A DNA stretch of 64,000 bases from the IMG/VR virus record IMGVR_UViG_3300017917_001996, positions 124,001-188,000 of that record, one strand, 5' to 3'. Below are positions 5,918 to 29,939 of the stretch, in pieces. Under the pieces are notes generated by a model. It saw only the letters and a program-made list of their open reading frames with translations, had not been told where the DNA came from and did not search any database. Position 1 is the stretch's first letter. Each line of letters opens with the position of its first letter. Both the position numbers and the translations under genes were made by a program.

Positions 5918-5946
5918 AAAAGGCCCTCCGGGGCCTTTTTGTTTTT
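5918..5946 (+). terminator. Rho-independent terminator after gp23
   Basis: AAAAGGCCC-TCC-GGGCCTTTT hairpin followed by TTGTTTTT. Confidence 0.85.
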
Positions 5947-5947
5947 C

Positions 5948-5955
5948 TATAAATA
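5948..5955 (+). promoter_or_regulatory. Consensus T4 late promoter TATAAATA
   Basis: Perfect match directly after the terminator, 4 nt before ATG 5960. Confidence 0.75.
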
Positions 5956-5959
5956 TAAT

Positions 5960-6667
5960 ATGGTAGAATTAATTTATACATTGATTGTAACGCACATTAC
6001 AATCGTATGTGTTACCCTTTATCTACATAGAGGGCAGGCACATAGAGCAATTGTATTCCATCCTATACTAGAACATTTTATGCGATTCTGGCTTTGGCTA
6101 ACCACAGGCATGGTAACCAAGGAATGGGTAGCAGTACACAGGGCACATCATAGATTCTGTGAAGAAAACAAAGATCCGCACAGCCCACATGTTTATGGAA
6201 TTTTCAAGGTGCTATTCCAAGGCGCAATGCTATACTATACTGCATCAAAGGATCGCAACATGGTAGAACAATTTGGGGTAGGAACACCCGACGATTGGCT
6301 AGAAAATAAATTATATACACCACACAGTCGTCTAGGAATTTTAATTATGTTATTAATTAATATTCTTTTATTTGGGTCTATAGGATTATTAGTATGGGGC
6401 ATACAAATGATTTGGATTCCATTTCATGCTGCAGGGATAGTCAATGGATTAGGTCATTGGTGGGGTTATAGGAACACCAATACAAAAGATAAAAGCAGAA
6501 ATTTAATACCACTGGCAGTTTGGATTGGCGGTGAAGAATTACACAATAACCATCATGCTGATCCAGGAAATCCTAAACTAAGCCGTCGATGGTTTGAGTT
6601 TGATATCGGTTGGATGTGGCTAACTGTTTTCAGAGCATTCGGGTTAGCAAAAATCAAAAACTCATAA
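5960..6667 (+). CDS. desA: Membrane fatty-acid (delta-9 acyl-CoA-type) desaturase, auxiliary metabolic gene
   Basis: Three His boxes HRGQAH, HRAHH and HNNHH; FWLWLTTGM and GHWWGYRN motifs; hydrophobic segments. Start moved from TTG 5939 (inside the terminator) to ATG 5960. Confidence 0.9.
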   Translation: MVELIYTLIVTHITIVCVTLYLHRGQAHRAIVFHPILEHFMRFWLWLTTGMVTKEWVAVHRAHHRFCEENKDPHSPHVYGIFKVLFQGAMLYYTASKDRNMVEQFGVGTPDDWLENKLYTPHSRLGILIMLLINILLFGSIGLLVWGIQMIWIPFHAAGIVNGLGHWWGYRNTNTKDKSRNLIPLAVWIGGEELHNNHHADPGNPKLSRRWFEFDIGWMWLTVFRAFGLAKIKNS

Positions 6668-7427: not shown

Positions 7428-7457
7428 AAAAATAGCACCTCCGGGTGCTATTTTTTT
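7428..7457 (+). terminator. Rho-independent terminator
   Basis: AAAAATAGCACC-TCCG-GGTGCTATTTTT (cUNCGg loop) followed by a U-tract. Confidence 0.9.
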
Positions 7458-7459
7458 AT

Positions 7460-7467
7460 GATAAATA
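7460..7467 (+). promoter_or_regulatory. Late promoter box (GATAAATA)
   Basis: Intergenic TAAATA directly after the terminator. Confidence 0.65.
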
Positions 7468-7486
7468 TCTAAAACGGAATCTATTA

Positions 7487-8113
7487 ATGACCACAGTTAA
7501 TCGCGCATTTGGAGACTTGTATATAAAGTCTTTAAACGGCAATGTTTACATTGATGCACAGAACGGTAATGGTGTAACTACCATTACAGGCAATCTTGTG
7601 GTTATCGGTAAGCAGACAAATATTGGTTCGATTGAAACCATTATTAGTGATAACATCATTACATTAGCTGCAAATATAACATCAGGTCCTCCACTTCCGA
7701 ATGCTGGACTTGAAGTACGTCGCGGTGATGAACCAAACTCTGCATTTCAATGGATTGAAGCAGTTAAACGTTGGCAAGTATTTGATGGGTCATATTGGGC
7801 CAACGTAATGATTAGAGTAGAGGATGATCCAGATCCTCATTTAGGTGGTAATCTTAATGTTAACAACTTTTACGTGTACTCGCATCCTGACAAAAACATC
7901 GTTCTTTGGCCAGGTAAACAAGACGGAAAAAGCACAGCAGGAATAGAGATAAAATATACTGAAGAGAAAATGGATGTTGCGGCAAATGCCGTTGTGCTAT
8001 CTTCTATGGTTCCTGGAAATGGAAAGTCGGGTTTGTATGTAACAAATACTGTTTCAGATAACGAAGAATTGATCACTAAAAGAAAAGCAGTTGTTTACTC
8101 TTTAGTGTTGTAA
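7487..8113 (+). CDS. Fibre/baseplate-associated structural protein with hydrophobic C-terminal tail (VVYSLVL)
   Basis: ITGNLVV.G and ISDNIITL fibre-shaft motifs. Start moved to ATG 7487, downstream of the terminator and promoter. Confidence 0.65.
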   Translation: MTTVNRAFGDLYIKSLNGNVYIDAQNGNGVTTITGNLVVIGKQTNIGSIETIISDNIITLAANITSGPPLPNAGLEVRRGDEPNSAFQWIEAVKRWQVFDGSYWANVMIRVEDDPDPHLGGNLNVNNFYVYSHPDKNIVLWPGKQDGKSTAGIEIKYTEEKMDVAANAVVLSSMVPGNGKSGLYVTNTVSDNEELITKRKAVVYSLVL

Positions 8114-10768: not shown

Positions 10769-12937
10769 ATGGCTACCATACGTACAATTTACGAAGTTTC
10801 TAAACCTCAGCAGCAATTTTATTCTGTTGAAAGGGTTGGATACACAGATTTAAGCACAGCAACATATCAGATTGTTAATGATCTATTGCAATTAGGCGCA
10901 TTTACAATTGCAAACGTTAACTTTAAATCTTTACAGTCTGGGTCCTTAAGTGCAGGATCTTGGCCAATTGGCGAAAGACAATACAGTTTAACATCCGGGG
11001 GCTCCGGTTACAAAGTTGGTGATGCACTAAAAGTCCAAGGCGGTGTTGGCACTACCCCTTACACTATACGAGTAGATTCAGTTAAAACAGAATCAAGACT
11101 TGGAGTAACTTATGGGGGTGTTATTAGTACATTTACGGTTACTGATGCAGGAACTTATACAGTTGATCCCGGTCCAGCCGACGATCTTCCTATTATCTAT
11201 ACTAATCCTTTGTATTCAGTTGCAACGCTAATAATCAGAGGTAATGTAACTAGTAGTACCGGTAATGTTGTTGTTCCGCCGGCTAGGAATTCTGCTCAAG
11301 TTAACGACACCGATTGGATTACGAGCTACGGCACTACCGGCGGAGGCGGTATTGATGGGTCACGTTGGCCTGAAGATGGAGCTTGGTGCTTTAACACAGA
11401 TTTTGATGCCAATGTTGTAATAGGTTCATTGGTTAGTTTTGAGTCGGGTAGCAACGATGCTTTGATCCCTGAAGGTACATATGTAACAAAGATTGTACCA
11501 ATCTCTGGAATTGTTAACGGCATATCGAGAGCAAGCTCCCTTGCTCCATATTATGAAAAAACAACAGAGGGATTCTACTTACAGTTTAGTCAACCTATAA
11601 CTATTAGAAAAGGAGATAGATTAAACTTTAGAGGTTTTGGTGCAACCGTAGAGAACCTTAATAAGAAAATTCCTAATCAATGGCAAGTTACACTCGAAGC
11701 TGGTGGTGCAGTTGATCCTCTCAATGATAACATTGGAGTGTTCGGCAATGTTGTAGCAGGTATAACCGACGGAAACGTCATCCAAGTTACTAACCTGGTA
11801 ACTTCTAATAATTATAATCCTGTTATATATGCAGGCCAAACTGTTACACAACCGCCTAATGCTATTGGTACCCCATTACCAGCTGGTGTATTAGTGAAGT
11901 CAGTAGACAACTATACGGAAGTAGTCGCAGGACAAAAAGTCTTTAAAGCAAATGTAACATTGAACACTAATGTAACGGTTCCTACAGATAAACAATTACA
12001 GTTTGTTTTCTCTAACCCGCAACCGTGGAGAGTCTGCTTCCAAGTTCTAGAAAACGTTACTACTCCAGCGTCAGGTTCTCAGATGTTATGTGTGTATGCT
12101 GCTACAGAGTTACAATTGCCAAACAACGGTGTCATTTACAAAGTAACTGATAGTTCAGGTACTCATGTAGACTGGGCAGGTTTAATAGGTAATGTTTGGT
12201 CTAACCCTGCAACTAAGAGACCAGACAGGTTCAGCTCTGATCAAGGTTTTTACAATAGAGAAGCTCGTATTAAAGATTCCCCAAACAACTATCCTATCAA
12301 CTACTCATTGACTATTACAAATAGAGGAATATTCCTTGGTATGTGGGAAGGTAACTGGAGTACTTTACAACTGAGCACTGTAGACACAACTAAAGATAAC
12401 TTTTTCAATTGGTTCTTGATTCAACGACCAGTAAACAGATTAACAGGGAAAGTTGTTACAACAGGTCGTTGCCCAGTATTCTGTATCAACGGTGTAGGAT
12501 TTAAGTATTGGAAATTTATTGTTCGCGAAGAGGATGTTTTACACCCAACTACAGGCCCAGTGAATTCTCAGTATAGAAAAGCTGACCCACTAAGTGATGC
12601 TATTTCTGACCCAGTAAACACACCTTACAGAGTACCAGCTGACTATCATACTATTGATAGTTTTGCAATACTTAACACTACTAGTCAAATTAGTTTAACT
12701 GAAGATAGTAAGTATCTGCTATCATTCTTGAATAATTTAACTACACCTAGATTCAGGTATCCTGATGAATTAGATATGATTGGACAGACATCAGCAGACG
12801 TTGTTGGACAAGGAGTTGAATTGTCGATTACTCCATATGGTCAGACTTTGCCTAGTACCTATCGCGCATTGCCTGCAAACAACAAATATAACACAGGTAT
12901 GAGAATTTGTGTTATCAAAGATATTCCAACAACATAA
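10769..12937 (+). CDS. Virion structural protein, paralog A
   Basis: Shares its C-terminal domain with the next gene (LT.TNRGIFLG.WEG, WFL.QRPV.RLTG, KF.VRE.D, RFRY.DELDM.G). Confidence 0.65.
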   Translation: MATIRTIYEVSKPQQQFYSVERVGYTDLSTATYQIVNDLLQLGAFTIANVNFKSLQSGSLSAGSWPIGERQYSLTSGGSGYKVGDALKVQGGVGTTPYTIRVDSVKTESRLGVTYGGVISTFTVTDAGTYTVDPGPADDLPIIYTNPLYSVATLIIRGNVTSSTGNVVVPPARNSAQVNDTDWITSYGTTGGGGIDGSRWPEDGAWCFNTDFDANVVIGSLVSFESGSNDALIPEGTYVTKIVPISGIVNGISRASSLAPYYEKTTEGFYLQFSQPITIRKGDRLNFRGFGATVENLNKKIPNQWQVTLEAGGAVDPLNDNIGVFGNVVAGITDGNVIQVTNLVTSNNYNPVIYAGQTVTQPPNAIGTPLPAGVLVKSVDNYTEVVAGQKVFKANVTLNTNVTVPTDKQLQFVFSNPQPWRVCFQVLENVTTPASGSQMLCVYAATELQLPNNGVIYKVTDSSGTHVDWAGLIGNVWSNPATKRPDRFSSDQGFYNREARIKDSPNNYPINYSLTITNRGIFLGMWEGNWSTLQLSTVDTTKDNFFNWFLIQRPVNRLTGKVVTTGRCPVFCINGVGFKYWKFIVREEDVLHPTTGPVNSQYRKADPLSDAISDPVNTPYRVPADYHTIDSFAILNTTSQISLTEDSKYLLSFLNNLTTPRFRYPDELDMIGQTSADVVGQGVELSITPYGQTLPSTYRALPANNKYNTGMRICVIKDIPTT

Positions 12938-12953
12938 TTAGGAGATTTATAAT

Positions 12954-14219
12954 ATGGCTTGTTTTTCAGTCACAAAAATAGGAATTTTAACAATTCCTGA
13001 ACTAGTTACTAACATTGTCAATGAAATGACCGGTAACGTCGCCGGTGGCGCAACTAATTCTATTCAATATTTTGATAAAGTATACGAAGGTAACAGCACA
13101 ACATATACTAGTAACAAAATTGTTATTTTAAAGTCTAATGTTGCAGTTGATCCATTGGCTAATGCATCGGTAGTAGGATCTTCGTTTGTGTCGAACACTT
13201 CACCTGGCTGGAGAATATGTTTTAACATTGATTCAACTCAAAAACGTATGCACGTTCATGTTGGAACAGATCTACAGTTGTCTAACAATGGTGCAATTGC
13301 AAGATTGAGCGATAGAGATACATCTTCTGCTCAGCCTATTGAACCAGTTGGAAACCTAACAGACACTTGGACAAATAATGGCCAGCCTGATCCAGATAAG
13401 TTTAATGAATTCTGGATAAACAGAAATGCAACTGGTACTGGTTATGAAGGTGCATATCCAATGAGCTACCTTCTTACTATGACTAATAGAGGCATTTTCT
13501 TAGGAGTATGGGAAGGAAGCCAAGAAGAAAATCCTCAAGGATTATCAGGGCCGTTTAAAAATGAAAACACTAACCCAGACTCTAACGCCGGTTATGGTAA
13601 TTCTCCGTTACGTTGGTTCTTAGTTCAAAGACCAGTTGACCGTTTGACAGGGCATGTTCGCGGTGGCGGCGCCCTTAGAGGCAGTAACGACCCAGCAGAC
13701 GAAAAGAGTAGATGTCCAGTTATTGCAATATCTGGATATGGTGCTCCGCAGAGATATAAAAAGTTTGTAGTCAGAGAAGTTGACATTCCGGTTCCGAGTC
13801 GTAAGAGACTTGCAGATGTGCAAACCGAAGACCAGCCTGCTATGTTAAATCCATATCAGCAACAGTCTTTAACTGAAACTGGTGAATTTATTGTTACGTT
13901 TATTAATTCAATTAATACATCACGTTTCCGTTATGCCGACGAGCTTGATATGCTAGGTACAGTAAGTGCTCGAGTAGTAGGTCCAGGTACGTCAATTACT
14001 GTTCGTGTATACGACGAGACTGACGATGGTACTCCTACTGGTATGCCAATGTATAGACAATACACAGCATTGTACTCGACTGAACGATATGGTGTTGGTA
14101 TGAGATTAATGGTTCTTACTAAGGTCGGTGTTGACATTAATGATCCTACCGATAATAGCCCTGCAGCAATACAACGAGCTATTGATGTCGAGAATCGCCA
14201 CGTGTTGCATTCAACTTGA
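12954..14219 (+). CDS. Virion structural protein, paralog B
   Basis: Same motifs as 10769-12937; SD AGGAG. Confidence 0.65.
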   Translation: MACFSVTKIGILTIPELVTNIVNEMTGNVAGGATNSIQYFDKVYEGNSTTYTSNKIVILKSNVAVDPLANASVVGSSFVSNTSPGWRICFNIDSTQKRMHVHVGTDLQLSNNGAIARLSDRDTSSAQPIEPVGNLTDTWTNNGQPDPDKFNEFWINRNATGTGYEGAYPMSYLLTMTNRGIFLGVWEGSQEENPQGLSGPFKNENTNPDSNAGYGNSPLRWFLVQRPVDRLTGHVRGGGALRGSNDPADEKSRCPVIAISGYGAPQRYKKFVVREVDIPVPSRKRLADVQTEDQPAMLNPYQQQSLTETGEFIVTFINSINTSRFRYADELDMLGTVSARVVGPGTSITVRVYDETDDGTPTGMPMYRQYTALYSTERYGVGMRLMVLTKVGVDINDPTDNSPAAIQRAIDVENRHVLHST

Positions 14220-14264
14220 TTTGAAAAGGAAAGTCTTTGAAACTTTTCAGTGTAACAGGGGTGC

Positions 14265-17200
14265 ATGATGTTCAGCAGCGCCTCGTCATGCATTCCTGAG
14301 TCACTAGTATCAGTTGACTTTGTTAGCCTTAAAGATCAAGTTCTTGATATCTCCATTGACGTAACTATCACAGTCAATGGAGAAATTATTTCTGATCGTC
14401 CAATTAATTTACTAATCGGCGACAGAGTTAAAGCCGAAGTAGTCAGTCCTCTAGGTTATTTACAATACCAGTTTTACGAATATTTTCTCGACGGACAAAA
14501 ACATCATTTTGCTGTAGTTAATAAAAGCTATTACGCACCTACTGTCAAAACAGCCGACGTTCCTAAAAAATGGTTCAACTATAATGTTTCTGATCTACGT
14601 ATAAGTTTCTACGACCCAGATGATGCAATAACCTATCCAATTGGTTTTGCTAAAAATTTTGTTGACATACAATCCTCGCATATCGTTCTAGACCACATAA
14701 ACAATACAGTTGGTTTCTATGGCGTTAATCATAATATGATTACAATGGTTACATTGCCAGGCGGACCAATTGAATATAAAAAGTTTTCCTATCAAATACC
14801 ACAAACAGATATTACAACCACCGATGTATTGGTACTTTGTTCTAATAGAAGATTATACCGTATTAGGTTTGATAACCGCTATTCGGATAACGGTGAATTT
14901 ACTCCTACTGTAATTCCTCTATTTAACTTAGGTAACCTTTGGTTTGATCAGGATATGCCTACAGGAGAGTCGTTTATTGAGTTCAGGCGTCAACGACTAT
15001 TGAATAAGTTATCTCCTGTATTAACAGCAATCGATATAGGTAACAATTACATCTGGCTAGCAGGCTACGACAGTATCTTTATTTTAAGTAAATCAAATTT
15101 TTCTCTTTTAAACACAATTAAGATAAATTTTGGAACAATAATATCAATATGTGCGATCAACAACGATGCTATTGCTACAACAAGGGACGGTAAGGTTCTT
15201 TATATTAATTACGCAGGAACAGTTACTACATTACATACTACCAGAGTTCTAGGAATGCCCTCCTCGATCAACAATAATACCGCTGTAGCGGTTCCTGACC
15301 CTGACAATAGATATATCTTAATTTTTGAGGATGATACGGGCAACTATACAACTTGGAACACTGAAGATTTTGCTCCTGCCTATGCCAGAGAATTTGAAGG
15401 ACAACTTTGGGTGACCGGGCACGATAACAATACAGTTCTACGATTTAATTCTCCCACCGACGTTTCAAAATTTAGTTTTGAAAATAAAGTTACTACAGTT
15501 TCAGTAGTTGGCAAATCAATACTAGCAACACATTACTTGCAAAACGTAACTACTTTAAACTTGGACGGTGTTGAAAAAATAATCTCGATGTCCTTTGAAA
15601 CTAAAAAAGGACCCATGAGTCATGTTGGTTCGGAACCTAATCGAGTAACTATGATAGGACAGGAAGGTATACTGCCCAAAACAAGTCCTGGACTAACTTG
15701 TTGGACTAACGGAATAATCAACGAGCCAACAAAGACAGGGGATTATGTAGGAGTTAGTTATCGAGGAGAAGCGGTCGGTAAATTCCGCTCGGTTTTAATT
15801 CTAGGTGAAACAGCTATCGATTACGATGTAGAAATAGCAGAAACTCCTGCAGAGTTTAAGTGTAGGAATTTTACACCTAAGGTAATTACATCAGACCAAA
15901 TAAGTACAACCACAGTTATTGTGTATATTGATCAAGATATTGAGTTAGAATCAAACATATTAGTGTCGGCAACGTTTGGCTACTTGTCTGTAAATAATGC
16001 AAGTTATTACGGTAAAGATTTTATAACTAAAAGTAGTTTTATTACACTTAAAGTTCCGTTTAACGATTCTTTAAGAGCAATTGCACCGATACTTAGCATT
16101 GGTACACATCAGATTGCTATTCCAATTAAATCATCGATCAACTCGCAGACAGAACTTGAATCATTATTACCTAGCAACATAACAAGTCTGACAGATCTTC
16201 TACCTAATGTAGTAGTCAATGGTTCTTTAATAATTCCTGTGACAGACAGTTACTTTATTCCTGATTATTATAGAGTTTCTACTGATCCAAACATTGGAGA
16301 TATAAATTTTACCTTAATAAGAGAAACTGAAGAAACTGTTCTTACTAAAGGTTTTACCTATGACCTTATGGCAGGCGATGAAGTTTTTGTTAGCAACATC
16401 GTTACATCTCCTAGCATCCATGACAAAAGACAGACTTTATTAGTGGGATCATTTGTAACAGGGCTATCCTGGCAAACAGCCGGTCCACCTCTAATAGACA
16501 CGTTGACTTTTGACACTTTAGTTGAACCATTCAAAAGCAATAATGAATATATCTTAATAGATGGTATTGTTTACGATGTTGGTTATAGATTATATGAATC
16601 TTCAATTGCAACGATAACATCTTCGAGTGCAATTACATGCAACCTTTATGTTAATAACAGCAATGCCGGTATGATCATTGATGGTAATACGGTCAACGGT
16701 TATTATGCCATTGATGTGCCAATTAGCTCGACAATTTCGTTAACTAGAAATATTACAGATTTCTTTCAAGAAGCTATTAATTTATACCAAGTTTTTTATG
16801 ATAATGAAATCTCAAGTAATGTTTATATCTCTGTGGGCAATTGGGACATTCAAAATAAGTACGGAACATCCTCAGATTTAGATACTAAGAATTTGGTACT
16901 AGAAGATATAAATTCTTCAATCATCGACGAACAGAATTTATTACATATAGCAATTACTCCAGAATCTCTAGCCGATTTATATACTCAGTTGGGAATTAAG
17001 ATCAGCGCACTGAATGTAAAATTTACAGAAATTCTTAAAGAGATTTCTGGGTTCGTATCACAGAGTCAAGATGCAATAATAGCTACACCACTCTCAGTAA
17101 TTCTTGAAAAATATAACGATGATTTAAAAACGGGTCAGAACTTCTTATCTTTCCAACAAATAAGTTTGTTTGATGTTAAACTTTCGATTGAAAATATATT

Positions 17201-19985
17201 AGAAAAATTTAAACAGACTGTTATATCTAAGAATCTTAGTGTTGAACTAATTCCTGGAACGTATGGACAAAATTTAGTTGCCAGTAGCGAACAACCTGTG
17301 TTGTTATCTGGTGCATCAGGTAGCAGTTTAATAGTAGGGGATATATTCGATAGTATATTTGTCCCTGAAAGAATAATCTCAACGCAACAAGATTACCTCA
17401 AAGTAAAGAACAACACTTATAAGAATACATTATTTAATGTAAGAATTATCAATGACCAAACCCCAGTTAGTAACAAGAATACATTATTTAATGTAAGAAT
17501 TATCAATGACCAAACTCCAGTTAGTGACAGGAGTTCTTTGTTTACAAAGAAAATTATCAATAATCAAATTCCAGTCAGTGACAGGAGTTCTTTGTTTACA
17601 AAGAAAATTATCAACGACTGGGTACCTGCTACTGATAGAATAACACTAACCAACGATCGAATTATCAACAATCAATTTCCTGATACAAGTAAAAGAACTG
17701 TATTCTCTGCTCGCATAATCAACGACCAAGTACCTGCCACTGATAGAACAACAGTGGTTAACGATCGAATTATTAACAATCAATTTCCTGACACAAGTAA
17801 AAGAACCGTATTCTCTGCTCGCATAATCAACGACTGGGTACCTGCTTCATATAAAAGAACAGTTGTTGTAAATGCTATCAATAACGAAACAATACCAGAA
17901 TCTAACAGAAAAACTGTAGTTACCACTCGAATTAATAATGATCGAATACCTGAATCGTATAAAAGAACAGTTGTTAATTACCAAATAATTAATAATCAAG
18001 TAACTGAAAGTTTTGGAAAAACTGTAATAAGTGGACGTTACCGTGCAGTTGAATTACCAGAGAGTTCTAAAAAGACATTAATTAGTGTTCATCTTATATC
18101 TGATCAGATACCTGAGAACTTCGGCAAAACAATAATCAGTAGCAGCATTAAATCTAACCAGATACCCGAGAACTTCGGCAAAACAATAATCAATGGTAGT
18201 ATCAAGAATAAGCAAATACTTGAAAGTTCTGATAAATCGTTAGTTTTTAATAGACTTTATTCTGATTACTTACCTACGCCTTGGTTGTCAAAAATCAAAT
18301 TGAAATCAACATCATCTATTTCGCCAACTTTTGTTAAATTTAAGAAAGACAGCTCTTTAATACCAGAAACTCAAAGCAAGACTCTGGTTAAAAATAGATT
18401 AAATCAAGCAGTAACATTTAGACAAAATTTAGTATTGTTAAAAACTACAGCTACTATTCCTAAAAAATCAACGGCCATTGGATTCGAGTTCAACTCAAAA
18501 ATTTTAAATCCTTTCTCTAGTTTTAAAAATCAACAGTCGCCAGTTACTGGCAACGGTTCTGGTATTTTAACTAGTAAATTATCGATTCAAGCACCAAAGA
18601 ATTTCAAATTGATTTACGCAAAATGGAATTTTATTCGAACTAAAGAAAATCTTTACGATTTTAAAAATAAAACAACCATTGATTTTATTGGTAGTTATTT
18701 CTTTAACAAGACCTTATTTGAAATATCGTCTACTAATTTTTATAACGATAGAGTTAAAATTCAAGTTGACAAATACAATGAATTTACAGACAGATTTGAT
18801 ATCAACAGAGATATAGATGTAACATTATTGACTACAAAGAATAAATCGGTTGTAGATTTAAAAAATGAGATGTTTCTAGCGTTGGAAAAAAATCTCATAG
18901 TTAATCATACTGAGGTATCAAGTGACAATCCGGTAGAGGTTAATATCGATAATCTATCGTCGAGTAAACTTGATTCTGAAGTTGACAGCAACAAAAAACT
19001 GTTAATTAACCAATTGGAAAAAGTTAGAGAACCTCTGTATAACATAATTGAATATAAAAATAAAACAGAAATTGATTTAACAGAGGTAATCATATCTAAG
19101 AGTGATCCAGTTGCTTACTTTAATCCCAGCCTCTTAAATGGCACTTTAGATCTGATCCTTGATTTGAATAATTTGTTAAAATCTCGTTACACTCTAGATA
19201 TACTGCTCAACCCAGCTGGATCAATAACACAACTTGGAGTCATTATAGACAGCTTGTCTACAGCGTACATACAATTACAAAGTCTAATCTCAGGAACCGA
19301 GTCCTCATTGTTATCAAAGATTAATGAAACTATGGATAGCACTGCGTCACAAATTAATTCAATGCTGATTAGAATTGATGGCGTATACACTCAGATACTA
19401 AAGACGTTAGACTCTTACAATGATGTTGCGTCAATGGTTCAGCAACCGTTGACATTAATCGATGATGTGTTAACAGCATATACTGTAAACAGTCTACCAC
19501 CGTTAATGGATGCACCGACACAAATTAATCAACCATTGGATCCGATGCTCGATCAACCAACAAGAATCTTTAAGCTATTGGATATACTAAAAGATGAAGC
19601 TACGACAATCTTTAAACCAATGGTAGTTAAACTAGATGAAGACCAAATTTGGGTATCGGGCGAACTAAACAAAACTGGAGCATATACGACATTAATACAA
19701 GTATATGCTGACGATGGCCGAGGTGGTGATAAAGTAACAAATCGAGGACATCCGCCATCAAACTTGCCTTTTGTTCTTTACAGTAAAGAATACAACTATG
19801 GATATGGTAGTTACTTGACCTTTGGAGAAGCTCAGGCAGCAGCCGATAAATACGCTTCAGCAACACCAATTCCTATTGTTGATACAAATTACTGGAATTA
19901 CAGAATTTATTTCAATAATAAACATTATTGTGTTCCAAAGAAGGGATTGGTATTCCCTGTTAAATGGTACATCCGCGGAGGCTAA
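14265..19985 (+). CDS. Large virion/fibre protein with a propeller-like N-region and 18-aa repeats; start uncertain
   Basis: 1906-aa ORF. The start lies inside a 14-bp hairpin and an out-of-frame TTG start with SD exists at 14237. Confidence 0.65.
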   Translation: MMFSSASSCIPESLVSVDFVSLKDQVLDISIDVTITVNGEIISDRPINLLIGDRVKAEVVSPLGYLQYQFYEYFLDGQKHHFAVVNKSYYAPTVKTADVPKKWFNYNVSDLRISFYDPDDAITYPIGFAKNFVDIQSSHIVLDHINNTVGFYGVNHNMITMVTLPGGPIEYKKFSYQIPQTDITTTDVLVLCSNRRLYRIRFDNRYSDNGEFTPTVIPLFNLGNLWFDQDMPTGESFIEFRRQRLLNKLSPVLTAIDIGNNYIWLAGYDSIFILSKSNFSLLNTIKINFGTIISICAINNDAIATTRDGKVLYINYAGTVTTLHTTRVLGMPSSINNNTAVAVPDPDNRYILIFEDDTGNYTTWNTEDFAPAYAREFEGQLWVTGHDNNTVLRFNSPTDVSKFSFENKVTTVSVVGKSILATHYLQNVTTLNLDGVEKIISMSFETKKGPMSHVGSEPNRVTMIGQEGILPKTSPGLTCWTNGIINEPTKTGDYVGVSYRGEAVGKFRSVLILGETAIDYDVEIAETPAEFKCRNFTPKVITSDQISTTTVIVYIDQDIELESNILVSATFGYLSVNNASYYGKDFITKSSFITLKVPFNDSLRAIAPILSIGTHQIAIPIKSSINSQTELESLLPSNITSLTDLLPNVVVNGSLIIPVTDSYFIPDYYRVSTDPNIGDINFTLIRETEETVLTKGFTYDLMAGDEVFVSNIVTSPSIHDKRQTLLVGSFVTGLSWQTAGPPLIDTLTFDTLVEPFKSNNEYILIDGIVYDVGYRLYESSIATITSSSAITCNLYVNNSNAGMIIDGNTVNGYYAIDVPISSTISLTRNITDFFQEAINLYQVFYDNEISSNVYISVGNWDIQNKYGTSSDLDTKNLVLEDINSSIIDEQNLLHIAITPESLADLYTQLGIKISALNVKFTEILKEISGFVSQSQDAIIATPLSVILEKYNDDLKTGQNFLSFQQISLFDVKLSIENILEKFKQTVISKNLSVELIPGTYGQNLVASSEQPVLLSGASGSSLIVGDIFDSIFVPERIISTQQDYLKVKNNTYKNTLFNVRIINDQTPVSNKNTLFNVRIINDQTPVSDRSSLFTKKIINNQIPVSDRSSLFTKKIINDWVPATDRITLTNDRIINNQFPDTSKRTVFSARIINDQVPATDRTTVVNDRIINNQFPDTSKRTVFSARIINDWVPASYKRTVVVNAINNETIPESNRKTVVTTRINNDRIPESYKRTVVNYQIINNQVTESFGKTVISGRYRAVELPESSKKTLISVHLISDQIPENFGKTIISSSIKSNQIPENFGKTIINGSIKNKQILESSDKSLVFNRLYSDYLPTPWLSKIKLKSTSSISPTFVKFKKDSSLIPETQSKTLVKNRLNQAVTFRQNLVLLKTTATIPKKSTAIGFEFNSKILNPFSSFKNQQSPVTGNGSGILTSKLSIQAPKNFKLIYAKWNFIRTKENLYDFKNKTTIDFIGSYFFNKTLFEISSTNFYNDRVKIQVDKYNEFTDRFDINRDIDVTLLTTKNKSVVDLKNEMFLALEKNLIVNHTEVSSDNPVEVNIDNLSSSKLDSEVDSNKKLLINQLEKVREPLYNIIEYKNKTEIDLTEVIISKSDPVAYFNPSLLNGTLDLILDLNNLLKSRYTLDILLNPAGSITQLGVIIDSLSTAYIQLQSLISGTESSLLSKINETMDSTASQINSMLIRIDGVYTQILKTLDSYNDVASMVQQPLTLIDDVLTAYTVNSLPPLMDAPTQINQPLDPMLDQPTRIFKLLDILKDEATTIFKPMVVKLDEDQIWVSGELNKTGAYTTLIQVYADDGRGGDKVTNRGHPPSNLPFVLYSKEYNYGYGSYLTFGEAQAAADKYASATPIPIVDTNYWNYRIYFNNKHYCVPKKGLVFPVKWYIRGG
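17421..18284 (+). repeat. About 16 tandem 54-nt (18-aa) coding repeats
   Basis: KNTLFNVRIINDQTPVSN / RSSLFTKKIINNQIPVSD / KRTVFSARIINDQVPATD etc.; near-identical copies at 17421 and 17475. Confidence 0.9.
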
Positions 19986-19991
19986 TTTTTA

Positions 19992-22900
19992 ATGATACTT
20001 GGTCAAAATCATCACGTTATTGTACCTGATACAAAAGACGAAGTTGCTATTGTAGAAAAAGTCTACTCTTTAACTTCAGCTGAGCTCGATAAAGATCTAA
20101 TTAGAATCGAGATGTACGGTGATGATTTTATGTTCGGAAGGAATCCAGATGATCTTCCTCCTGAGCCCGGTGTTGGTATATTAGATGATTTTACAGCAAG
20201 AGTGCCGACTCCGCCACATGAGCTAATTAAAGTTTTCTTGCCGCAATTTCAAATCGAATCAGTTAATCGTGCAATTGGAAATACAGCTAGTGCTGATTTA
20301 CTAAACGGAACCAATGGTATCAGTAGCATATGGCCAGACAACGTTAACGGAAATATTATAGTTATAAATTATGGTTTACACGATGCCAAAGCAAACATTG
20401 ACATTCAAACTTATAAAAATAATTTAATATCGTTACGTCAGGGTTTGGCAGAAGAACAAATTTTAGTTTGGCAAACACCATCACCTACACTTACAGTTAA
20501 TACTGCTCCTTATGCTGATGCAATGATTGAAGTAGCTGCACAGTTCAACGACATAGTTTCAGATACCAGGAAAATTTCAAATTGGACTGATGAATTGCCC
20601 GACGGTGAGTACCCACGTCAGTTAGGTTATTCTCGTTGGGTTGATTTAGTATTGTCTGAAAAAATAAACTTGGCAATTTTAAAACATTTAGGATCTGACA
20701 GACATAGGTATTATAGACTTGACTACCAGGAAAAATTTATTTTAGATAATCAAAATCAAATTGATTTATCATTTACCCCTTTGTCAACTAGTTGGGTTGA
20801 AATATATCACAGAAAAAATACAGCTTTTTATGCAGTGTCAAGAGGCAATGTTGACATTATAACCAATCCAATTAACAATGTAAGCGGACATTTAGCCGGT
20901 GGCCTGCACAGTATAGAAACTGGCGAGCAGTTAGTATCTGTAACCAACGGATATACTTTAATTAAAATTCGTAGAGAAACCGGGCAAGTAATCTATCATA
21001 AAACATTTAATTTTGAAGCGGATATACAAAATGCCAAAGCATTGGCTACAGCGTTAAACGAAACATCGAGCGATTACATTGTTGTAGTAACAACATACAA
21101 TGAACCAAAATCTAATAGACTTATATTTGAATTAGCAGATGCTATGTGTCGCTGCGGTGCAAGTACTGAGATATTTGGCAATCCAGAATTTAGACAAAGT
21201 GCAGCTTATATATTAATTGGTATTCCTGGCGTAGGTGCTGGCGGAGGTATGGAAGCATACGCAGGAATGATAGATAATGACAGGTATGCATATTGCGAAA
21301 TTGATTTTGAAATAGCATCCAACGGTGTACCATATGCTCGGGATATCTTTCCTCCAGTGGCCCAAATACGAAATTTAGATGATGAAGTTATACCTTTAAT
21401 TAATCCTGTCTACGATTTAATTGCTGGAGTACCGCCCATTAACGGAGAACGAATTCTTAACCCTAGGTATGCAACATTCTTTACTCCAGGTGTAACCAAT
21501 GAAACCTTTGTAATACAAGGAAACAAGATTATTTTTAGCTCTCAGTTAACTGGTATCGTTACAGTAATTTGTGATACGCAACCAGAAACGTCGGCTAACG
21601 GTGTGGTAATCAACATTGACAACATTCACAACGTTACAAATTATATACATAGATTTAACCCAGCAAGATGGGCGCCTGGGAAGCTAACAACAACTTATCC
21701 TCCAGCTGGCACGGATCCTTTATCGCCACCACAAGTTGTAAGTGCCGCAGGAGTTAATGCATTAGGACTATACAACACATCATTGGCTGCAAGAGTAGGC
21801 GATTCTTTTTATTGTGAACCAATAGTTATCAATCAGCCAAACTTTGGTTATGTACGAATTACCTCAGACCGTAAAAAGATGATTTACTACCCATTTCCTA
21901 ACTATATAGGAATGGACAGCTTTTCATACACGTTAATGACACAGCACGGCCAGGCTGGAATGACCAAAGCAGTTTATGTTAAAGTCACTTCGACTCCAGT
22001 GCCAACTTATATGTTAACTTCTAATGTAAATGAAATCGAAGAAGGTGGTAATGTTAAGATCACGTTGACAACAACTTTGATAAGCAACGGAACAAGAGTA
22101 CCGTACATGATATACGGAGTTAATAAGGATGACCTCGTTAGTCAAAATTTAACTGGAGAATTTGTTGTACAAAATAACCAGTCGATACTTGTAATAACTG
22201 CGGCTAGTGATTTTTTAACAGAAGGCCCTGAGTATTTAACGCTTGCTTTGACTGGTGTTTACCCAACTAAAAAGATTCAGATCAAAATAAAAGATACGTC
22301 TAGAACTCCTGTTTATCGACTAACTTCCAATTTGGCAGTAGCAAACGAGGGCGATGTAGTTAGATTTACAGCAAATGCTAATTATGTGTTAGATGGGACA
22401 ACAGTAGGTTTCTTAATCACTGGTATATCTCCTCAAGATATTGTACAACCACTGTCGGGCAACTTTACTTTTTTATCAAATGTGGCCTATAAAGATATTC
22501 AGATAGCCAGAGATGCCAAGACTGAAGGCTCAGAGACAATGACAATGTCTCTAATAGGTCCTCTTCCTACAGTAAGTAATAGTGTGTTTATAACAGACAC
22601 CTCGTTAGATCCATCTTACAAATTATATTCTAATATTAATATATCTGGGGAAGGCGATACAATTAAGTTTTATGTAGAGACTACTGAAGTTCAAAACGGT
22701 ACAACAATACCTTATGTAATCACCGGTATACAACCCGATGACATCCTTTCGCCTCTCAGCGGAAACTTTACAATTCAAAATCACTATGCTGAGCAACTAA
22801 TAACTTCGAGAAAAGACAGAACCACAGAAGGCCCAGAAGTATTGGTTATGTCTTTACAAGGAATACCTCAGTCTAACGCAAATGTTATAACCACTAGCGT

Positions 22901-24467
22901 TCTGATCAATGATACATCGATTGATCCGACTTATAAACTATTCTCTAATGTTAATGTAATCGACGAAGGAAATTCAATTAAGTTCTATATTCAAACTACT
23001 GATGCACTCAATGGAGACATTGTACCGTATGAAATAACTGGAATTTCCTCATCTGACATAGTCCAGTCGTTGTCTGGGGTGTTCTCAATAAACAATAATT
23101 ATGCCGAGACTGTAATTACTACACGAGAAGATAGGACCACCGAAGGCGCAGAAACTATTACATTTAAAATATCTGGAGTTTTAGAATCTTCTGCAAATAT
23201 AACATCAGCTAATGTAACAATAAATGATACGTCGCTAACACCAAATTATATTTTAAGCTCTAATGTTAGCTCTGTTAACGAAGGCAATAGCGTTAAGTTT
23301 ATACTTTCTACATCTAATGTTCCTAACGGAGAAAAAGTGTATTATTCAATTGATAATATGACAATCGCTGATATAAATCAACCTCTGTCTGGTTATTTTG
23401 AAATTAATAGCAACATTGGTGAAGTAGTAATTACTACCAAGAAAGATTTAAATACCGAAGGTGACGAACAACTTACGTTATCTCTTGACACTATATCAAC
23501 GGTTGGAAATGTTACTAGTCATACAGTTACAGTTATAGATACTTCTTTATCGCCGCTTATGTCTTTTACTTCAAACAGGACAGTGATGATGGAGTCTAGT
23601 ACAGTTAAATTTACGGTGACTGTAGTATCTCAAAACGTTCCAGACGGTACTCAAATTCTTTACTCATTGGAGGGATTAGACGGTTTTAATGTAAGCGAAG
23701 ATTTGGTAGGATCATATGAAGGACCTAATTATTTAACGATCAATAATAATCAGGCAGAGCTGTTGTTTACAACTGTGTCTGATAGACGTACTGAGAACAC
23801 CGAGATTTTACGTGTTTCGATATTACCAATATTTAATGCAGTCTGGGTCGACCAACGATCATCTATAGATGTATCAGTGATTGATTCATCCAAGGGCTTA
23901 ACGTACAGCATTTCTTTTAGTGCTTCAACGATATTTGAGGGTGCTAGCACTGTAGCTACAATTGTGTGTACTGGATTATTCCCGGGCGAAACAATTAACT
24001 ATTCTATATCAGGTACAAATGTAGGAGCAACATTGGTAACATCAGCAATTGGAACGTTAACGCCTGTTAACGGTATCGCAACATTAAATATCCAAACAAA
24101 AATTGATGGTGTAAAATCTGGTGCAAGACCTGTTATGCTTTATATCTCAGGCCCTGGCGGCAGTTCTGCTTCTGCATCGTTTACCTTAGATGATTACTAT
24201 ACCTGTAACAACACTATCAGTCAATTTGGAACTTACACGATCGATTTTGGAACCAGAACAGGAGTCATTGGTATCAATTACGATTCATATGGCGCACCGG
24301 ATTCATATTCGTTAACTTGGAATGGAATTACAAGATCTGGAATTCTAAGATCCGGAACAGGATCTTTGCGTATTACTAAAACTACAGCATATCCTACTAC
24401 TGCAACTTTTACAATGACTTCTGGGTCTGCAGGTAGTCAAGCAGAAGCAACAATTTATTGCGGCTAA
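19992..24467 (+). CDS. Mosaic adhesin: degenerate SGNH domain, ILEI/GG-type lectin-like domain, cadherin-like Ig domain, 7 Calx-beta-like repeats
   Basis: GDD / NYGLHDA / DGEYP blocks; FRQSAAYILIGIPG; YYP.PNYIGMDSFSY; repeated EG..V.F...TEG.E...I.DTS units. Confidence 0.7.
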   Translation: MILGQNHHVIVPDTKDEVAIVEKVYSLTSAELDKDLIRIEMYGDDFMFGRNPDDLPPEPGVGILDDFTARVPTPPHELIKVFLPQFQIESVNRAIGNTASADLLNGTNGISSIWPDNVNGNIIVINYGLHDAKANIDIQTYKNNLISLRQGLAEEQILVWQTPSPTLTVNTAPYADAMIEVAAQFNDIVSDTRKISNWTDELPDGEYPRQLGYSRWVDLVLSEKINLAILKHLGSDRHRYYRLDYQEKFILDNQNQIDLSFTPLSTSWVEIYHRKNTAFYAVSRGNVDIITNPINNVSGHLAGGLHSIETGEQLVSVTNGYTLIKIRRETGQVIYHKTFNFEADIQNAKALATALNETSSDYIVVVTTYNEPKSNRLIFELADAMCRCGASTEIFGNPEFRQSAAYILIGIPGVGAGGGMEAYAGMIDNDRYAYCEIDFEIASNGVPYARDIFPPVAQIRNLDDEVIPLINPVYDLIAGVPPINGERILNPRYATFFTPGVTNETFVIQGNKIIFSSQLTGIVTVICDTQPETSANGVVINIDNIHNVTNYIHRFNPARWAPGKLTTTYPPAGTDPLSPPQVVSAAGVNALGLYNTSLAARVGDSFYCEPIVINQPNFGYVRITSDRKKMIYYPFPNYIGMDSFSYTLMTQHGQAGMTKAVYVKVTSTPVPTYMLTSNVNEIEEGGNVKITLTTTLISNGTRVPYMIYGVNKDDLVSQNLTGEFVVQNNQSILVITAASDFLTEGPEYLTLALTGVYPTKKIQIKIKDTSRTPVYRLTSNLAVANEGDVVRFTANANYVLDGTTVGFLITGISPQDIVQPLSGNFTFLSNVAYKDIQIARDAKTEGSETMTMSLIGPLPTVSNSVFITDTSLDPSYKLYSNINISGEGDTIKFYVETTEVQNGTTIPYVITGIQPDDILSPLSGNFTIQNHYAEQLITSRKDRTTEGPEVLVMSLQGIPQSNANVITTSVLINDTSIDPTYKLFSNVNVIDEGNSIKFYIQTTDALNGDIVPYEITGISSSDIVQSLSGVFSINNNYAETVITTREDRTTEGAETITFKISGVLESSANITSANVTINDTSLTPNYILSSNVSSVNEGNSVKFILSTSNVPNGEKVYYSIDNMTIADINQPLSGYFEINSNIGEVVITTKKDLNTEGDEQLTLSLDTISTVGNVTSHTVTVIDTSLSPLMSFTSNRTVMMESSTVKFTVTVVSQNVPDGTQILYSLEGLDGFNVSEDLVGSYEGPNYLTINNNQAELLFTTVSDRRTENTEILRVSILPIFNAVWVDQRSSIDVSVIDSSKGLTYSISFSASTIFEGASTVATIVCTGLFPGETINYSISGTNVGATLVTSAIGTLTPVNGIATLNIQTKIDGVKSGARPVMLYISGPGGSSASASFTLDDYYTCNNTISQFGTYTIDFGTRTGVIGINYDSYGAPDSYSLTWNGITRSGILRSGTGSLRITKTTAYPTTATFTMTSGSAGSQAEATIYCG
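22005..24194 (+). repeat. Seven ~100-aa Calx-beta/Ig-like coding repeats
   Basis: Units begin TY.L.SN....EG and end I.DTS..P. Confidence 0.8.
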
Positions 24468-29931: not shown

Positions 29932-29939
29932 TATAAATA
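29932..29939 (+). promoter_or_regulatory. Consensus late promoter TATAAATA
   Basis: Perfect intergenic match. Confidence 0.75.

What the first reader, a model, noticed from the sequence alone, without database searches (positions are those of the whole stretch)
14226..14299. Start of the 1906-aa gene is locked in a 14-bp hairpin crossed by an out-of-frame uORF
AGGGGTGCATGATG (14257-14270) pairs with CGTCATGCATTCCT (14284-14297; 3 G-U, 13-nt loop), burying the putative SD and both ATGs (14265, 14268). Upstream, SD AAGGA plus TTG 14237 opens a 20-codon ORF (MKLFSVTGVHDVQQRLVMHS) that stops at TGA 14297-14299, at the hairpin base. Removing 28 nt (14261-14288) fuses the two frames into a natural-looking MKLFSVTGCIPESLVSVDF. 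Possible explanations: uORF-dependent unmasking of the start, a +1 shift or bypass as in T4 gene 60, a recent palindromic micro-insertion that silences the gene, or an assembly artefact.
Basis: partly seen in the sequence, partly recalled or inferred. Interest (0 to 1): 0.65.

Follow-up and report, generated by a model that had tools for sequence, protein, structure and literature searches.

The report
Conserved start-masking hairpin with leader ORF
In an uncultured freshwater jumbo phage, the start of a giant tail-region gene is buried in an RNA hairpin crossed by a 20-codon leader ORF; both are conserved in distant relatives, so this looks like a classical translational-coupling switch and not a gene defect, bypass or assembly error.

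Summary
A 15-bp hairpin (14256-14270 with 14284-14298, -23.4 kcal/mol, z -4.6) buries the Shine-Dalgarno (SD) sequence and both ATGs of the 1906-aa gene. An out-of-frame 20-codon ORF (TTG 14237 to TGA 14299), with its own SD, runs through it.

The fused, bypass, micro-insertion and artefact readings are rejected. Homologues begin MFSS.S.C.P, so the "removable" 28 nt encode conserved residues of a folded N-terminal domain. A second assembly gives the identical sequence.

Across 29 distinct homologous loci (41-59% protein identity), 22 keep a hairpin in the same register, with compensatory changes. Each 5' UTR pairs better with its own coding arm than with others' (z -4.8). A start codon in the same -1 frame, open into the hairpin, is kept in 21 of those 22 (15 of 16 lineages; chance 0.26; p about 2e-8), in nine different configurations.

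In the one hairpin-less clade that also lacks the leader ORF and keeps the same upstream gene, that gene's stop lies 9 nt before the ATG.

Best explanation: leader-ORF translation, probably fed by the upstream sheath-like gene, opens the hairpin and permits limited initiation. This resembles R1 tap-repA and MS2 coat-lysis. It is a new member of a known kind. Function is inferred, not shown.

The parts
12954..14219 (+). Upstream gene, 421 aa, the second of two sheath-like genes. Its stop is TGA 14217-14219. It is the probable source of ribosomes for the leader ORF.
   Evidence: ORF list. Matches phrog_12249 'tail sheath' at 2e-43. The same gene precedes the giant gene in the homologous loci whose gene tables were returned.
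14226..14230 (+). SD-like AAGGA of the leader ORF, 6 nt before TTG 14237.
   Evidence: Sequence. Pairing to an anti-SD tail is -5.6 kcal/mol. 13 of 21 homologous leader ORFs have -5.4 or better, against a background mean of -1.3 with 4% at -6 or better.
14237..14299 (+). Leader ORF (uORF): TTG start, 20 codons, TGA stop at 14297-14299. It is in the -1 frame relative to the giant gene, reads through both arms of the hairpin and overlaps the main ORF by 32 nt.
   Evidence: An in-frame start at -37 to -25, open into the hairpin, is present in 21 of 22 hairpin-bearing homologues and 15 of 16 lineages. The shuffle null is 0.26 and the binomial tail is 1.7e-8. The other two frames score 1/22 and 3/22.
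14256..14270 (+). 5' arm of the hairpin. It holds the main SD (AGGGG, 14257-14261) and both ATGs (14265, 14268).
   Evidence: Folds. Same register in homologues, with compensatory changes.
14271..14283 (+). 13-nt loop, covering codons 2-6 counted from ATG 14268 (F-S-S-A and the first base of the next Ser codon).
14284..14298 (+). 3' arm of the hairpin. It covers the last two bases of codon 6, codons 7-10 (S-C-I-P) and the first base of codon 11, counted from ATG 14268.
   Evidence: Ser6, Cys8 and Pro10 (S7, C9 and P11 in the alignment's numbering from ATG 14265) are invariant in homologues. The codons between them covary with the 5' UTR.
14268..19985 (+). Giant gene. The conserved start ATG 14268 aligns with the M of MFSS... 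in homologues. ATG 14265 gives the 1906-aa 'MMF' form, which some homologues also have. The N-terminus is an Ig-like beta-sandwich plus a beta-propeller. The middle is a long run of ~15-aa repeats.
   Evidence: (ATG invariant in 29 of 29).

Best explanation
This is a conserved cis-acting translational control element at the junction between an abundant tail-sheath-like gene and a giant, presumably low-copy, virion gene.

1. The mRNA folds so that the giant gene's SD and AUG pair with its own codons 6-10. On its own this would nearly abolish initiation.
2. A short leader ORF starts about 31 nt upstream. It has its own SD directly after the upstream gene's stop, and it is read in the -1 frame through both arms of the hairpin.
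3. It ends at the 3' foot of the stem, about 30 nt past the main AUG. A ribosome finishing the leader ORF therefore holds the 3' arm inside itself and leaves the SD and AUG single-stranded just behind it.
4. Either a fresh 30S subunit or the terminating ribosome itself can then start on the giant gene.
5. The giant protein is thus made only as a fixed, small fraction of upstream translation.

Shown here: the structure, its conservation and covariation, the conservation of the leader ORF's start, frame and SD, and the conserved main SD and ATG.
Inferred: that the leader ORF is translated, that it activates rather than represses, that it is fed by the upstream gene, and that the purpose is stoichiometry.
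For: - Strength: the hairpin is strong and an outlier in its genome.
- Conservation: 22 of 29 distinct homologous start regions have an SD/AUG-to-codon 6-10 duplex of -11 kcal/mol or better in the same register. Those loci were found through protein motifs far from the start.
- Compensatory changes: the arms read AGGUUGG/UCAACCU in L034, GGGGAC/GUCCCC in L041, GUGCAC/GUGCAC in L017, GGGUACA/UGUACCC in L028 and CGCAUGA/UCAUGCG in L005.
- Pair counts: 74% of cells in the inner helix are paired. For the whole tested structure it is 64%, against 31-46% with slid partners. 7 of 11 inner pairs show changes on both sides.
- Cognate test: each 5' UTR pairs with its own coding arm at a mean of -14.2 kcal/mol, against -11.95 +/- 0.48 for permuted partners (z -4.8).
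- Leader ORF: a start is kept in the same frame in 15 of 16 lineages in nine configurations (TTG/ATG/GTG at -31, TTG/ATG at -28, TTG/ATG at -34, ATG at -37, ATG at -25), p about 2e-8. The other frames are nearly empty.
- Leader SD: present in 13 of 21.
- Main start: the ATG is invariant in 29 of 29, and the main SD is -6 kcal/mol or better in 18 of 21.
- Association: the leader ORF occurs in 21 of 22 hairpin-bearing sequences against 2 of 7 hairpin-less ones (Fisher 0.001).
- Hairpin-less clade: L016, L022, L029 and L042 have no leader ORF, and the upstream gene's stop lies 9 nt before the ATG. That is coupling by another route.
- Age: hairpin plus leader ORF occur on both sides of the midpoint root of the protein tree.
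- Transcription: there is no strong plus-strand terminator between 7455 and 24467, so co-transcription with the sheath-like genes is likely.
- Precedent: RNA-unfolding and termination-reinitiation coupling at -38 to -50 nt overlaps in fr and MS2 coat-lysis (PMC12548453), and leader peptides Tap and RepR (PMC8053102).
Against: - There are no expression data: no RNA run holds the stretch, and there is no ribosome profiling or mass spectrometry.
- The host and its anti-SD sequence are unknown.
- The leader ORF's stop just after the stem derives from the conserved Asn/Asp-Ser codons. It is also present in hairpin-less homologues, so its position need not be selected for this role.
- By lineage, the hairpin-uORF association is weak (15/16 against 2/4, p 0.09).
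- The composition-matched controls of the cognate test reach z -2 to -2.8, so the excess is real but not huge.
- A ribosome crossing the main start in another frame could also inhibit initiation.
- L008/L009 keep a weaker hairpin without a well-placed leader start.
Confidence: 0.6

Rival explanations
1. The hairpin is a plain constitutive throttle, or the operator of a trans-acting repressor, that keeps the giant protein scarce. The leader ORF is not an activator: it is neutral, inhibitory, or only a 30S standby or loading site next to the stem.
For: - The hairpin's conservation and covariation fit any masking model.
- The leader peptide sequence is not conserved.
- Its stop position is explained by conserved codons of the main frame.
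- L008/L009 keep a hairpin without the leader start.
- The same genome has another SD-masking hairpin with no overlapping uORF, at G000:10728.
- Ribosome standby on single-stranded flanks is an established way to overcome structured ribosome-binding sites (PMC5934652, abstract).
Against: - Frame-specific retention of a start codon in nine configurations, usually with an SD, is hard to explain if the ORF is never translated.
- A stem of about -23 kcal/mol over SD and AUG would leave almost no spontaneous initiation, yet the main SD and ATG are strictly kept.
- No repressor candidate or conserved loop motif beyond the coding constraint was identified.
Confidence: 0.3
2. The protein is made from the upstream TTG by recoding, and the hairpin is a recoding stimulator. 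The route would be either a +1 frameshift in the overlap (for instance at UCC UGA G, 14294-14300) or a T4 gene 60-like bypass of about 28 nt.
For: - Both frames are open between 14256 and 14296, so a +1 event anywhere there would fuse them.
- The window's leader ORF ends with UCC UGA, which from my own knowledge resembles the antizyme shift site.
- A stem-loop sits at the site.
Against: - Homologues start at the conserved ATG with a conserved SD.
- The residues inside the would-be gap are invariant or nearly so, and residues 6-9 form the first strand of the modelled domain.
- Leader peptides differ in length and sequence.
- The codons before the leader stop are not conserved: UCC UGA, CCC CAA UAG, CCC CGA UAG, UCC UGG UAG.
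- One clade has a stop in that frame 4 nt before the ATG and no leader ORF at all.
- For bypass there are no matched take-off and landing codons (GGG at 14258, but TCA at 14286), and no stop follows the take-off codon.
Confidence: 0.03
3. The feature is a recent palindromic micro-insertion that silences the gene, or an assembly error.
For: None beyond the fact that removing 28 nt happens to give an open fused frame.
Against: - An independent Logan contig of the pond-metagenome run is identical over 13300-15300 at word depth 103, with no indel or alternative contig. It probably comes from the source sample.
- The same hairpin architecture is present in 21 other, independently assembled loci from many samples.
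- The 1906-aa frame is intact.
Confidence: 0.01

Closest known systems
Plasmid leader-peptide coupling: R1 tap-repA, IncI2 repR-repA, IncI1/IncB repY-repZ
   Same: A short leader ORF of about 20 codons overlaps the start of the main gene. The main gene's translation is coupled to leader translation, and RNA structure at the main ribosome-binding site is overcome by the leader's ribosome (PMC8053102).
   Different: In the plasmids, the leader stop lies at or next to the main start, and an antisense RNA controls leader translation (plus a pseudoknot in IncI1/IncB). Here the leader stops about 30 nt beyond the main AUG. No antisense RNA or pseudoknot is known, and the setting is a phage structural operon. 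There is no sequence relationship.
Coat-lysis coupling in RNA phages MS2 and fr
   Same: The downstream start lies inside a hairpin, tens of nucleotides upstream of the stop of an overlapping out-of-frame ORF. The overlap is -50 nt in MS2 and -38 nt in fr, and -32 nt here. Termination of the overlapping ORF activates the masked start by unfolding or by back-scanning (PMC12548453).
   Different: There, the overlapping ORF is a full-length gene (coat) in an RNA genome. Here it is a dedicated mini-ORF in a dsDNA jumbo phage, placed between a sheath-like gene and a giant gene.
T4 gene 60 translational bypass
   Same: A stem-loop lies at the start of a discontinuity between two reading frames in a phage gene.
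   Different: There are no matched take-off and landing codons and no stop after the take-off codon. The 'gap' encodes conserved protein, and the downstream frame has its own conserved SD and ATG. It neither works like gene 60 nor is a member. The gene 60 features are from my own knowledge.
SD-sequestering hairpins and ribosome standby (MS2 coat start)
   Same: Stable structure over the SD and AUG sets the initiation rate, and single-stranded flanks can help 30S access (PMC5934652).
   Different: Here a conserved, SD-equipped, frame-conserved ORF crosses the stem. This points to active unfolding by an elongating ribosome rather than passive standby.

Membership tests
Leader-ORF translational coupling by RNA unfolding (tap-repA type) | RNA structure sequesters the SD and/or start codon of the main gene. 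| tested here: met
   15-bp stem over the SD and both ATGs, -23.4 kcal/mol, z -4.6. Conserved with compensatory changes. This is a predicted structure, not a probed one.
Leader-ORF translational coupling by RNA unfolding (tap-repA type) | A short upstream ORF with its own initiation signals is read through the sequestering structure. | tested here: met
   AAGGA plus TTG 14237, 20 codons crossing both arms. The start and frame are conserved in 15 of 16 lineages, p about 2e-8. An SD is present in 13 of 21.
Leader-ORF translational coupling by RNA unfolding (tap-repA type) | Main-gene translation depends on leader-ORF translation. | not testable with these tools
   This needs reporters, toeprinting or profiling. 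The only indirect support is co-occurrence (21/22 against 2/7) and the direct 9-nt coupling in the hairpin-less clade.
Leader-ORF translational coupling by RNA unfolding (tap-repA type) | An antisense RNA controls leader translation (plasmid systems). | not tested
   No minus-strand promoter or terminator was flagged at 13800-14700. No RNA data are available.
MS2/fr coat-lysis type termination-dependent activation | The masked start lies tens of nucleotides upstream of the stop of an overlapping out-of-frame ORF. | tested here: met
   The leader stop ends at 14299 and the main ATG is at 14268, an overlap of 32 nt. In most homologues the stop is at +30 or +33.
MS2/fr coat-lysis type termination-dependent activation | Activation requires termination at that stop. 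| not testable with these tools
   This needs stop-codon relocation experiments.
T4 gene 60-type bypass | Matched take-off and landing codons flank the gap, with a stop directly after the take-off codon. | tested here: not met
   The take-off codon would be GGG 14258-14260, followed by GTG, not a stop. The triplet that ends the proposed gap, where a matching landing codon would have to lie, is TCA 14286-14288.
T4 gene 60-type bypass | The gap is untranslated. | tested here: not met
   The gap encodes F3, S5 and S7. S5 and S7 are invariant in 30 homologues and F3 is 90% or more conserved. Residues 6-9 form the first strand of the modelled domain.
Programmed +1 frameshift (prfB/antizyme type) | A conserved shift-prone codon next to a stop or slow codon, and no independent start in the downstream frame. 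| tested here: not met
   The codons before the leader stop vary among homologues. The downstream frame has an invariant ATG and a conserved SD.
Any curated RNA family (Rfam 15) | A covariance-model match at or above the gathering score. | tested here: not met
   Nothing overlaps 14226-14299. The only hit in 13900-14600 is a sub-threshold chance match elsewhere.

The most novel reading that the evidence does not exclude
The leader ORF may be more than a passive coupler. It could be a regulated relay: sheath-like gene stop, then leader ORF, then backward reinitiation about 30 nt upstream. Its efficiency would be tuned by a phage or host factor, or by ribosome dwell time at the leader stop, so that the giant protein is made at a set time and in a set ratio during tail assembly. 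Such a device would be widespread and ancient in a whole clade of uncultured freshwater jumbo phages.
Probability: 0.12. Interest if true: 0.6.

Novelty: new member of a known kind. Interest (0 to 1): 0.45.

Why it matters
- Annotation: the gene is not broken. It starts at the conserved ATG 14268 (or 14265), and no recoding needs to be invoked.
- Regulation: this is a well-supported, phylogenetically deep example of a leader-ORF plus masking-hairpin element in dsDNA jumbo phages, a group whose post-transcriptional regulation is almost unstudied. It has no Rfam family.
- Biology: it suggests how such phages might set a large expression ratio between an abundant sheath-like protein and a giant downstream protein that are probably made from one transcript.
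- Testability: the paired natural variants give ready material for testing unfolding against scanning models of translational coupling. These are the hairpin-plus-leader version and the 9-nt direct-coupling version of the same junction.

Tried and rejected
- DNA search of 13700-15200 against isolated phage genomes found no match.
- A single-protein scan of viral contigs found nothing. An alignment-based scan was needed.
- Pfam finds nothing for the giant protein, PHROGs gives only one weak, uninformative hit, a PDB sequence search finds nothing, and the ESM Atlas feature search scores below 0.8, which is a lead only.
- An outer helix between the conserved TTGACTAT at -31 and codons 11-13 (AAT AGT CAA) looked plausible by eye and in single folds. 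It showed no cognate advantage (z -0.18) and only 50% paired cells, so it was dropped as a conserved feature. It may still form in the window itself.
- TTGAC as a sigma-70 -35 box was rejected. No -10 box lies at the right spacing, the transcript would start inside the coding region, and nothing was flagged by the scan.
- An intrinsic terminator was rejected: there is no U-run after the stem.
- RNAalifold on all 29 sequences gave an empty consensus.
- Synonymous-site conservation over codons 6-11 was not clearly elevated and was uninformative.
- Two other apparently structured 'starts' in the window (5939, 7445) are intrinsic terminators sitting upstream of the true ATGs.
- Two look-ups of the closest homologues returned no DNA because the sample file was too large.
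- Only contigs, not raw reads, were available for the read check, and no RNA run holds the stretch.
Full report
**Context**

The window is bases 124001-188000 of a 250-kb IMG/VR virus record estimated to be 71% complete. A pond-metagenome run holds the same sequence. The region is a plus-strand structural block:
- two consecutive genes that match a PHROG tail-sheath family (722 aa at 10769-12937 and 421 aa at 12954-14219);
- the 1906-aa ORF (14265-19985);
- a 1491-aa protein with an ILEI domain here, whose homologues also carry GDSL-lipase domains.

This gene order recurs in the homologous loci. No strong plus-strand terminator lies between 7455 and 24467. Co-transcription of the sheath-like genes and the giant gene is therefore likely, but it is inferred.

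**1.

- Bases 14256-14270 pair with 14284-14298: 15 bp, 3 G-U pairs and a 13-nt loop.
- The stem alone folds at -23.4 kcal/mol, z -4.6. A 116-nt context gives -38.3 kcal/mol, z -4.15.
- The 5' arm holds the SD-like AGGGG and both ATGs.
- AAGGA (14226-14230) followed by TTG 14237 opens a 20-codon ORF in the -1 frame. It stops at TGA 14297-14299.
- Opening SD plus AUG costs about 22-24 kcal/mol. This is the highest of 37 starts in the window and of 322 crudely called starts in the whole record (median 6.4, 95th percentile 13.5).
- The two next-highest 'starts' in the window are really intrinsic terminators that precede the true ATGs.

**2. The gene is not broken, fused or bypassed**

- A word search with residues 1-500 found 44 homologues at 40-59% identity.
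- Forty-two of them begin MFSS.S.C.P or MMF... One of the other two has an N-terminal extension and the other is a fragment.
- In a 30-sequence alignment M2, S5, S7, C9 and P11 are invariant and F3 is nearly so.
- An AlphaFold model of residues 1-470 has mean pLDDT 82, and 86-95 over the first 100 residues. It places residues 6-9 as the first strand of an Ig-like beta-sandwich, followed by a beta-propeller. Foldseek matches filamin-NHL and other propellers.
- The ATG is invariant in 29 of 29 aligned start regions. An SD of -6 kcal/mol or better precedes it in 18 of 21.
- An independently built Logan contig of the probable source run is identical over 13300-15300 at word depth 103, with no indel or alternative contig.
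- The bypass, micro-insertion and artefact readings are rejected. A +1 shift has no conserved shift site and is unnecessary.

**3. The hairpin is conserved at the RNA level**

- I collected DNA for homologous junctions using protein motifs located 80-270 residues into the protein, so the sampling is blind to the start region. Sources were viral contigs, metagenome contigs and exact-protein look-ups.
- This gave 29 distinct start regions. They align without gaps around the ATG.
- In 22 of them, the segment just before the ATG (-11 to -1, sometimes into the ATG) pairs with codons 6-10 in the same register, at -11 to -24 kcal/mol.
- The arms differ in sequence but stay complementary. Examples are AGGUUGG/UCAACCU in L034, GGGGAC/GUCCCC in L041, GUGCAC/GUGCAC in L017, GGGUACA/UGUACCC in L028 and CGCAUGA/UCAUGCG in L005.
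- Pair counting on all 29 rows, including the 7 without a hairpin, gives 74% paired cells for the inner helix. The whole tested structure gives 64%, against 31-46% when partners are slid. Seven of 11 inner pairs show changes on both sides.
- Each 5' UTR pairs better with its own coding arm than with the arms of other loci: mean -14.2 against -11.95 +/- 0.48, z -4.8, with 0 of 20000 permutations as low.
- Composition-matched control segments give z -0.2 to -2.8, so the excess is real but moderate.
- The window has the strongest stem of all.

**4. The leader ORF is conserved too**

- In 21 of the 22 hairpin-bearing sequences (15 of 16 lineages on the tree), a start codon lies at -37 to -25 in the same -1 frame and stays open into the stem.
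- Shuffling the spacer gives this with probability 0.26, so the binomial tail is 1.7e-8. The other two frames score 1/22 and 3/22.
- The start occurs in nine configurations: TTG, ATG or GTG at -31; TTG or ATG at -28; TTG or ATG at -34; ATG at -37; ATG at -25. Wherever TTG -31/-28 is missing, an ATG, GTG or TTG in the same frame replaces it. Turnover of this kind points to selection on translation rather than on a DNA motif.
- An SD of -5.4 kcal/mol or better precedes the leader start in 13 of 21, against 4% of background windows at -6 or better. It often abuts the upstream gene's stop, as in TAAAGGAG or TAATGGAG.
- The leader peptide is not conserved. Its stop at +30 or +33 comes from the conserved Asn/Asp-Ser codons and is also present in hairpin-less homologues. 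I therefore do not claim that the stop position is itself selected.

**5. Natural variants**

- Seven sequences, forming four groups on the protein tree, lack the hairpin.
- In the L016/L022/L029 plus L042 clade, the leader frame is closed or lacks a well-placed start. The upstream gene's stop sits only 9 nt before the ATG. That is ordinary close-range coupling.
- L024 has a different upstream context.
- L015 and L026 keep a leader start without a hairpin.
- L008/L009 keep a weaker, bulged hairpin, but a 1-nt shift has moved the TTG out of frame.
- The leader ORF is associated with the hairpin in 21/22 against 2/7 sequences (Fisher 0.001). By lineage the figures are 15/16 against 2/4 (p 0.09).
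- Hairpin plus leader ORF occur on both sides of the midpoint root of the protein tree, with terminal branches of up to about one substitution per site. The arrangement is therefore old.

**6. Mechanism**

The best-supported model is leader-ORF-dependent unmasking.
- A ribosome that initiates at the leader start is probably helped by ribosomes released at the upstream stop 18 nt away. It melts the stem as it elongates.
- When it reaches the leader stop, the 3' arm is inside the ribosome. The SD and AUG, about 30 nt behind, are free for a new 30S subunit, or for the terminating ribosome to slide back.
- Both routes are established for the coat-lysis pairs of MS2 (-50 nt) and fr (-38 nt), as reviewed in PMC12548453.
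- Dedicated leader peptides with this role are known from plasmid R1 (Tap) and IncI2 (RepR) (PMC8053102).
- The likely benefit is a fixed, low ratio of the giant protein to the abundant sheath-like proteins. This is inference.
- I put 0.6 on this model, 0.3 on 'the hairpin is a throttle or operator and the leader ORF is not an activator', and a few percent on recoding or artefact.

**7. Comparison and novelty**

- The element works like tap-repA and like MS2 coat-lysis. It shares no sequence with either, lacks the antisense RNA of the plasmid systems as far as can be seen, and matches no Rfam family.
- Paper searches found no description of such an element in jumbo phages. That is absence in the searched library, not proof.
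- It is a new member of a known kind of regulation. Interest is moderate, for the depth of conservation and the natural paired variants.

**Limits**

- All structures are predicted.
- The host and its 16S tail are unknown.
- The homologues are metagenomic.
- The read check used contigs from the probable source sample.
- No expression data exist.
- No operator restriction was triggered.

Noticed in passing
window 5918-5960 and 7428-7490: Two strong, near-symmetrical intrinsic terminators: GGCCCTCCGGGGCC plus a T-run at 5918-5939, and AGCACCTCCGGGTGCT plus a T-run at 7428-7455. The first is followed by TATAAATA (5948-5955), which from my own knowledge resembles a T4 late promoter. The mechanical ORF starts TTG 5939 and GTG 7445 lie inside these terminators. 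The real starts are probably ATG 5960 and ATG 7487. TATAAATA occurs only twice in the window (also at 29932-29939), fewer than chance expects.
   Followed up: partly
window 10769-12937 and 12954-14219: Two consecutive genes (722 aa and 421 aa) both match the same PHROG tail-sheath family (phrog_12249). This pairing is conserved in the homologous loci. It could be a duplicated or split sheath, or a sheath plus a sheath-like tube or initiator.
   Followed up: no
window 14265-19985 (protein residues about 1110-1400): The giant protein carries a long run of degenerate ~15-residue repeats (of the form ...TLFNVRIINDQTPVS...). The N-terminal 470 aa are modelled as an Ig-like sandwich plus a beta-propeller. 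There is no Pfam hit. Homologues range from 1145 to 3233 aa and some add Laminin_G_3 or subtilase domains.
   Followed up: partly
G000:C1:10680-10790 (outside the window): A second SD-masking hairpin in the same genome. AACUAAGAGGG before an ATG pairs with CCCUCUUAGU in codons 4-7 of a protein with a signal-peptide-like N-terminus (MRLPLLVAGLFLSISAWAG). There is no overlapping leader ORF. Opening cost is 17.6 kcal/mol.
   Followed up: partly
L016:880-1000, L022, L029, L042:1440-1560: A clade of homologues has replaced the roughly 45-nt spacer, hairpin and leader ORF with a 9-nt spacer between the upstream gene's stop and the same conserved MFSS... start. This is a natural 'direct-coupling' version of the junction.
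   Followed up: yes
window 14237-14244 and homologous loci at -31 to -24: The motif (A)TTGAC(T/C)AT around the leader start is conserved at the nucleotide level in many loci, beyond what a start codon alone requires. It is not a sigma-70 promoter by spacing, and its apparent pairing with codons 11-13 shows no co-evolution. The reason for the extra conservation is unexplained.
   Followed up: partly
window 19992-24467: The next gene (1491 aa) starts 7 nt after the giant gene's stop. It carries an ILEI domain here, and its homologues also carry GDSL-lipase domains, PA14 or Laminin_G_3. It may be a host-envelope-degrading or adhesin-like tail protein.
   Followed up: no
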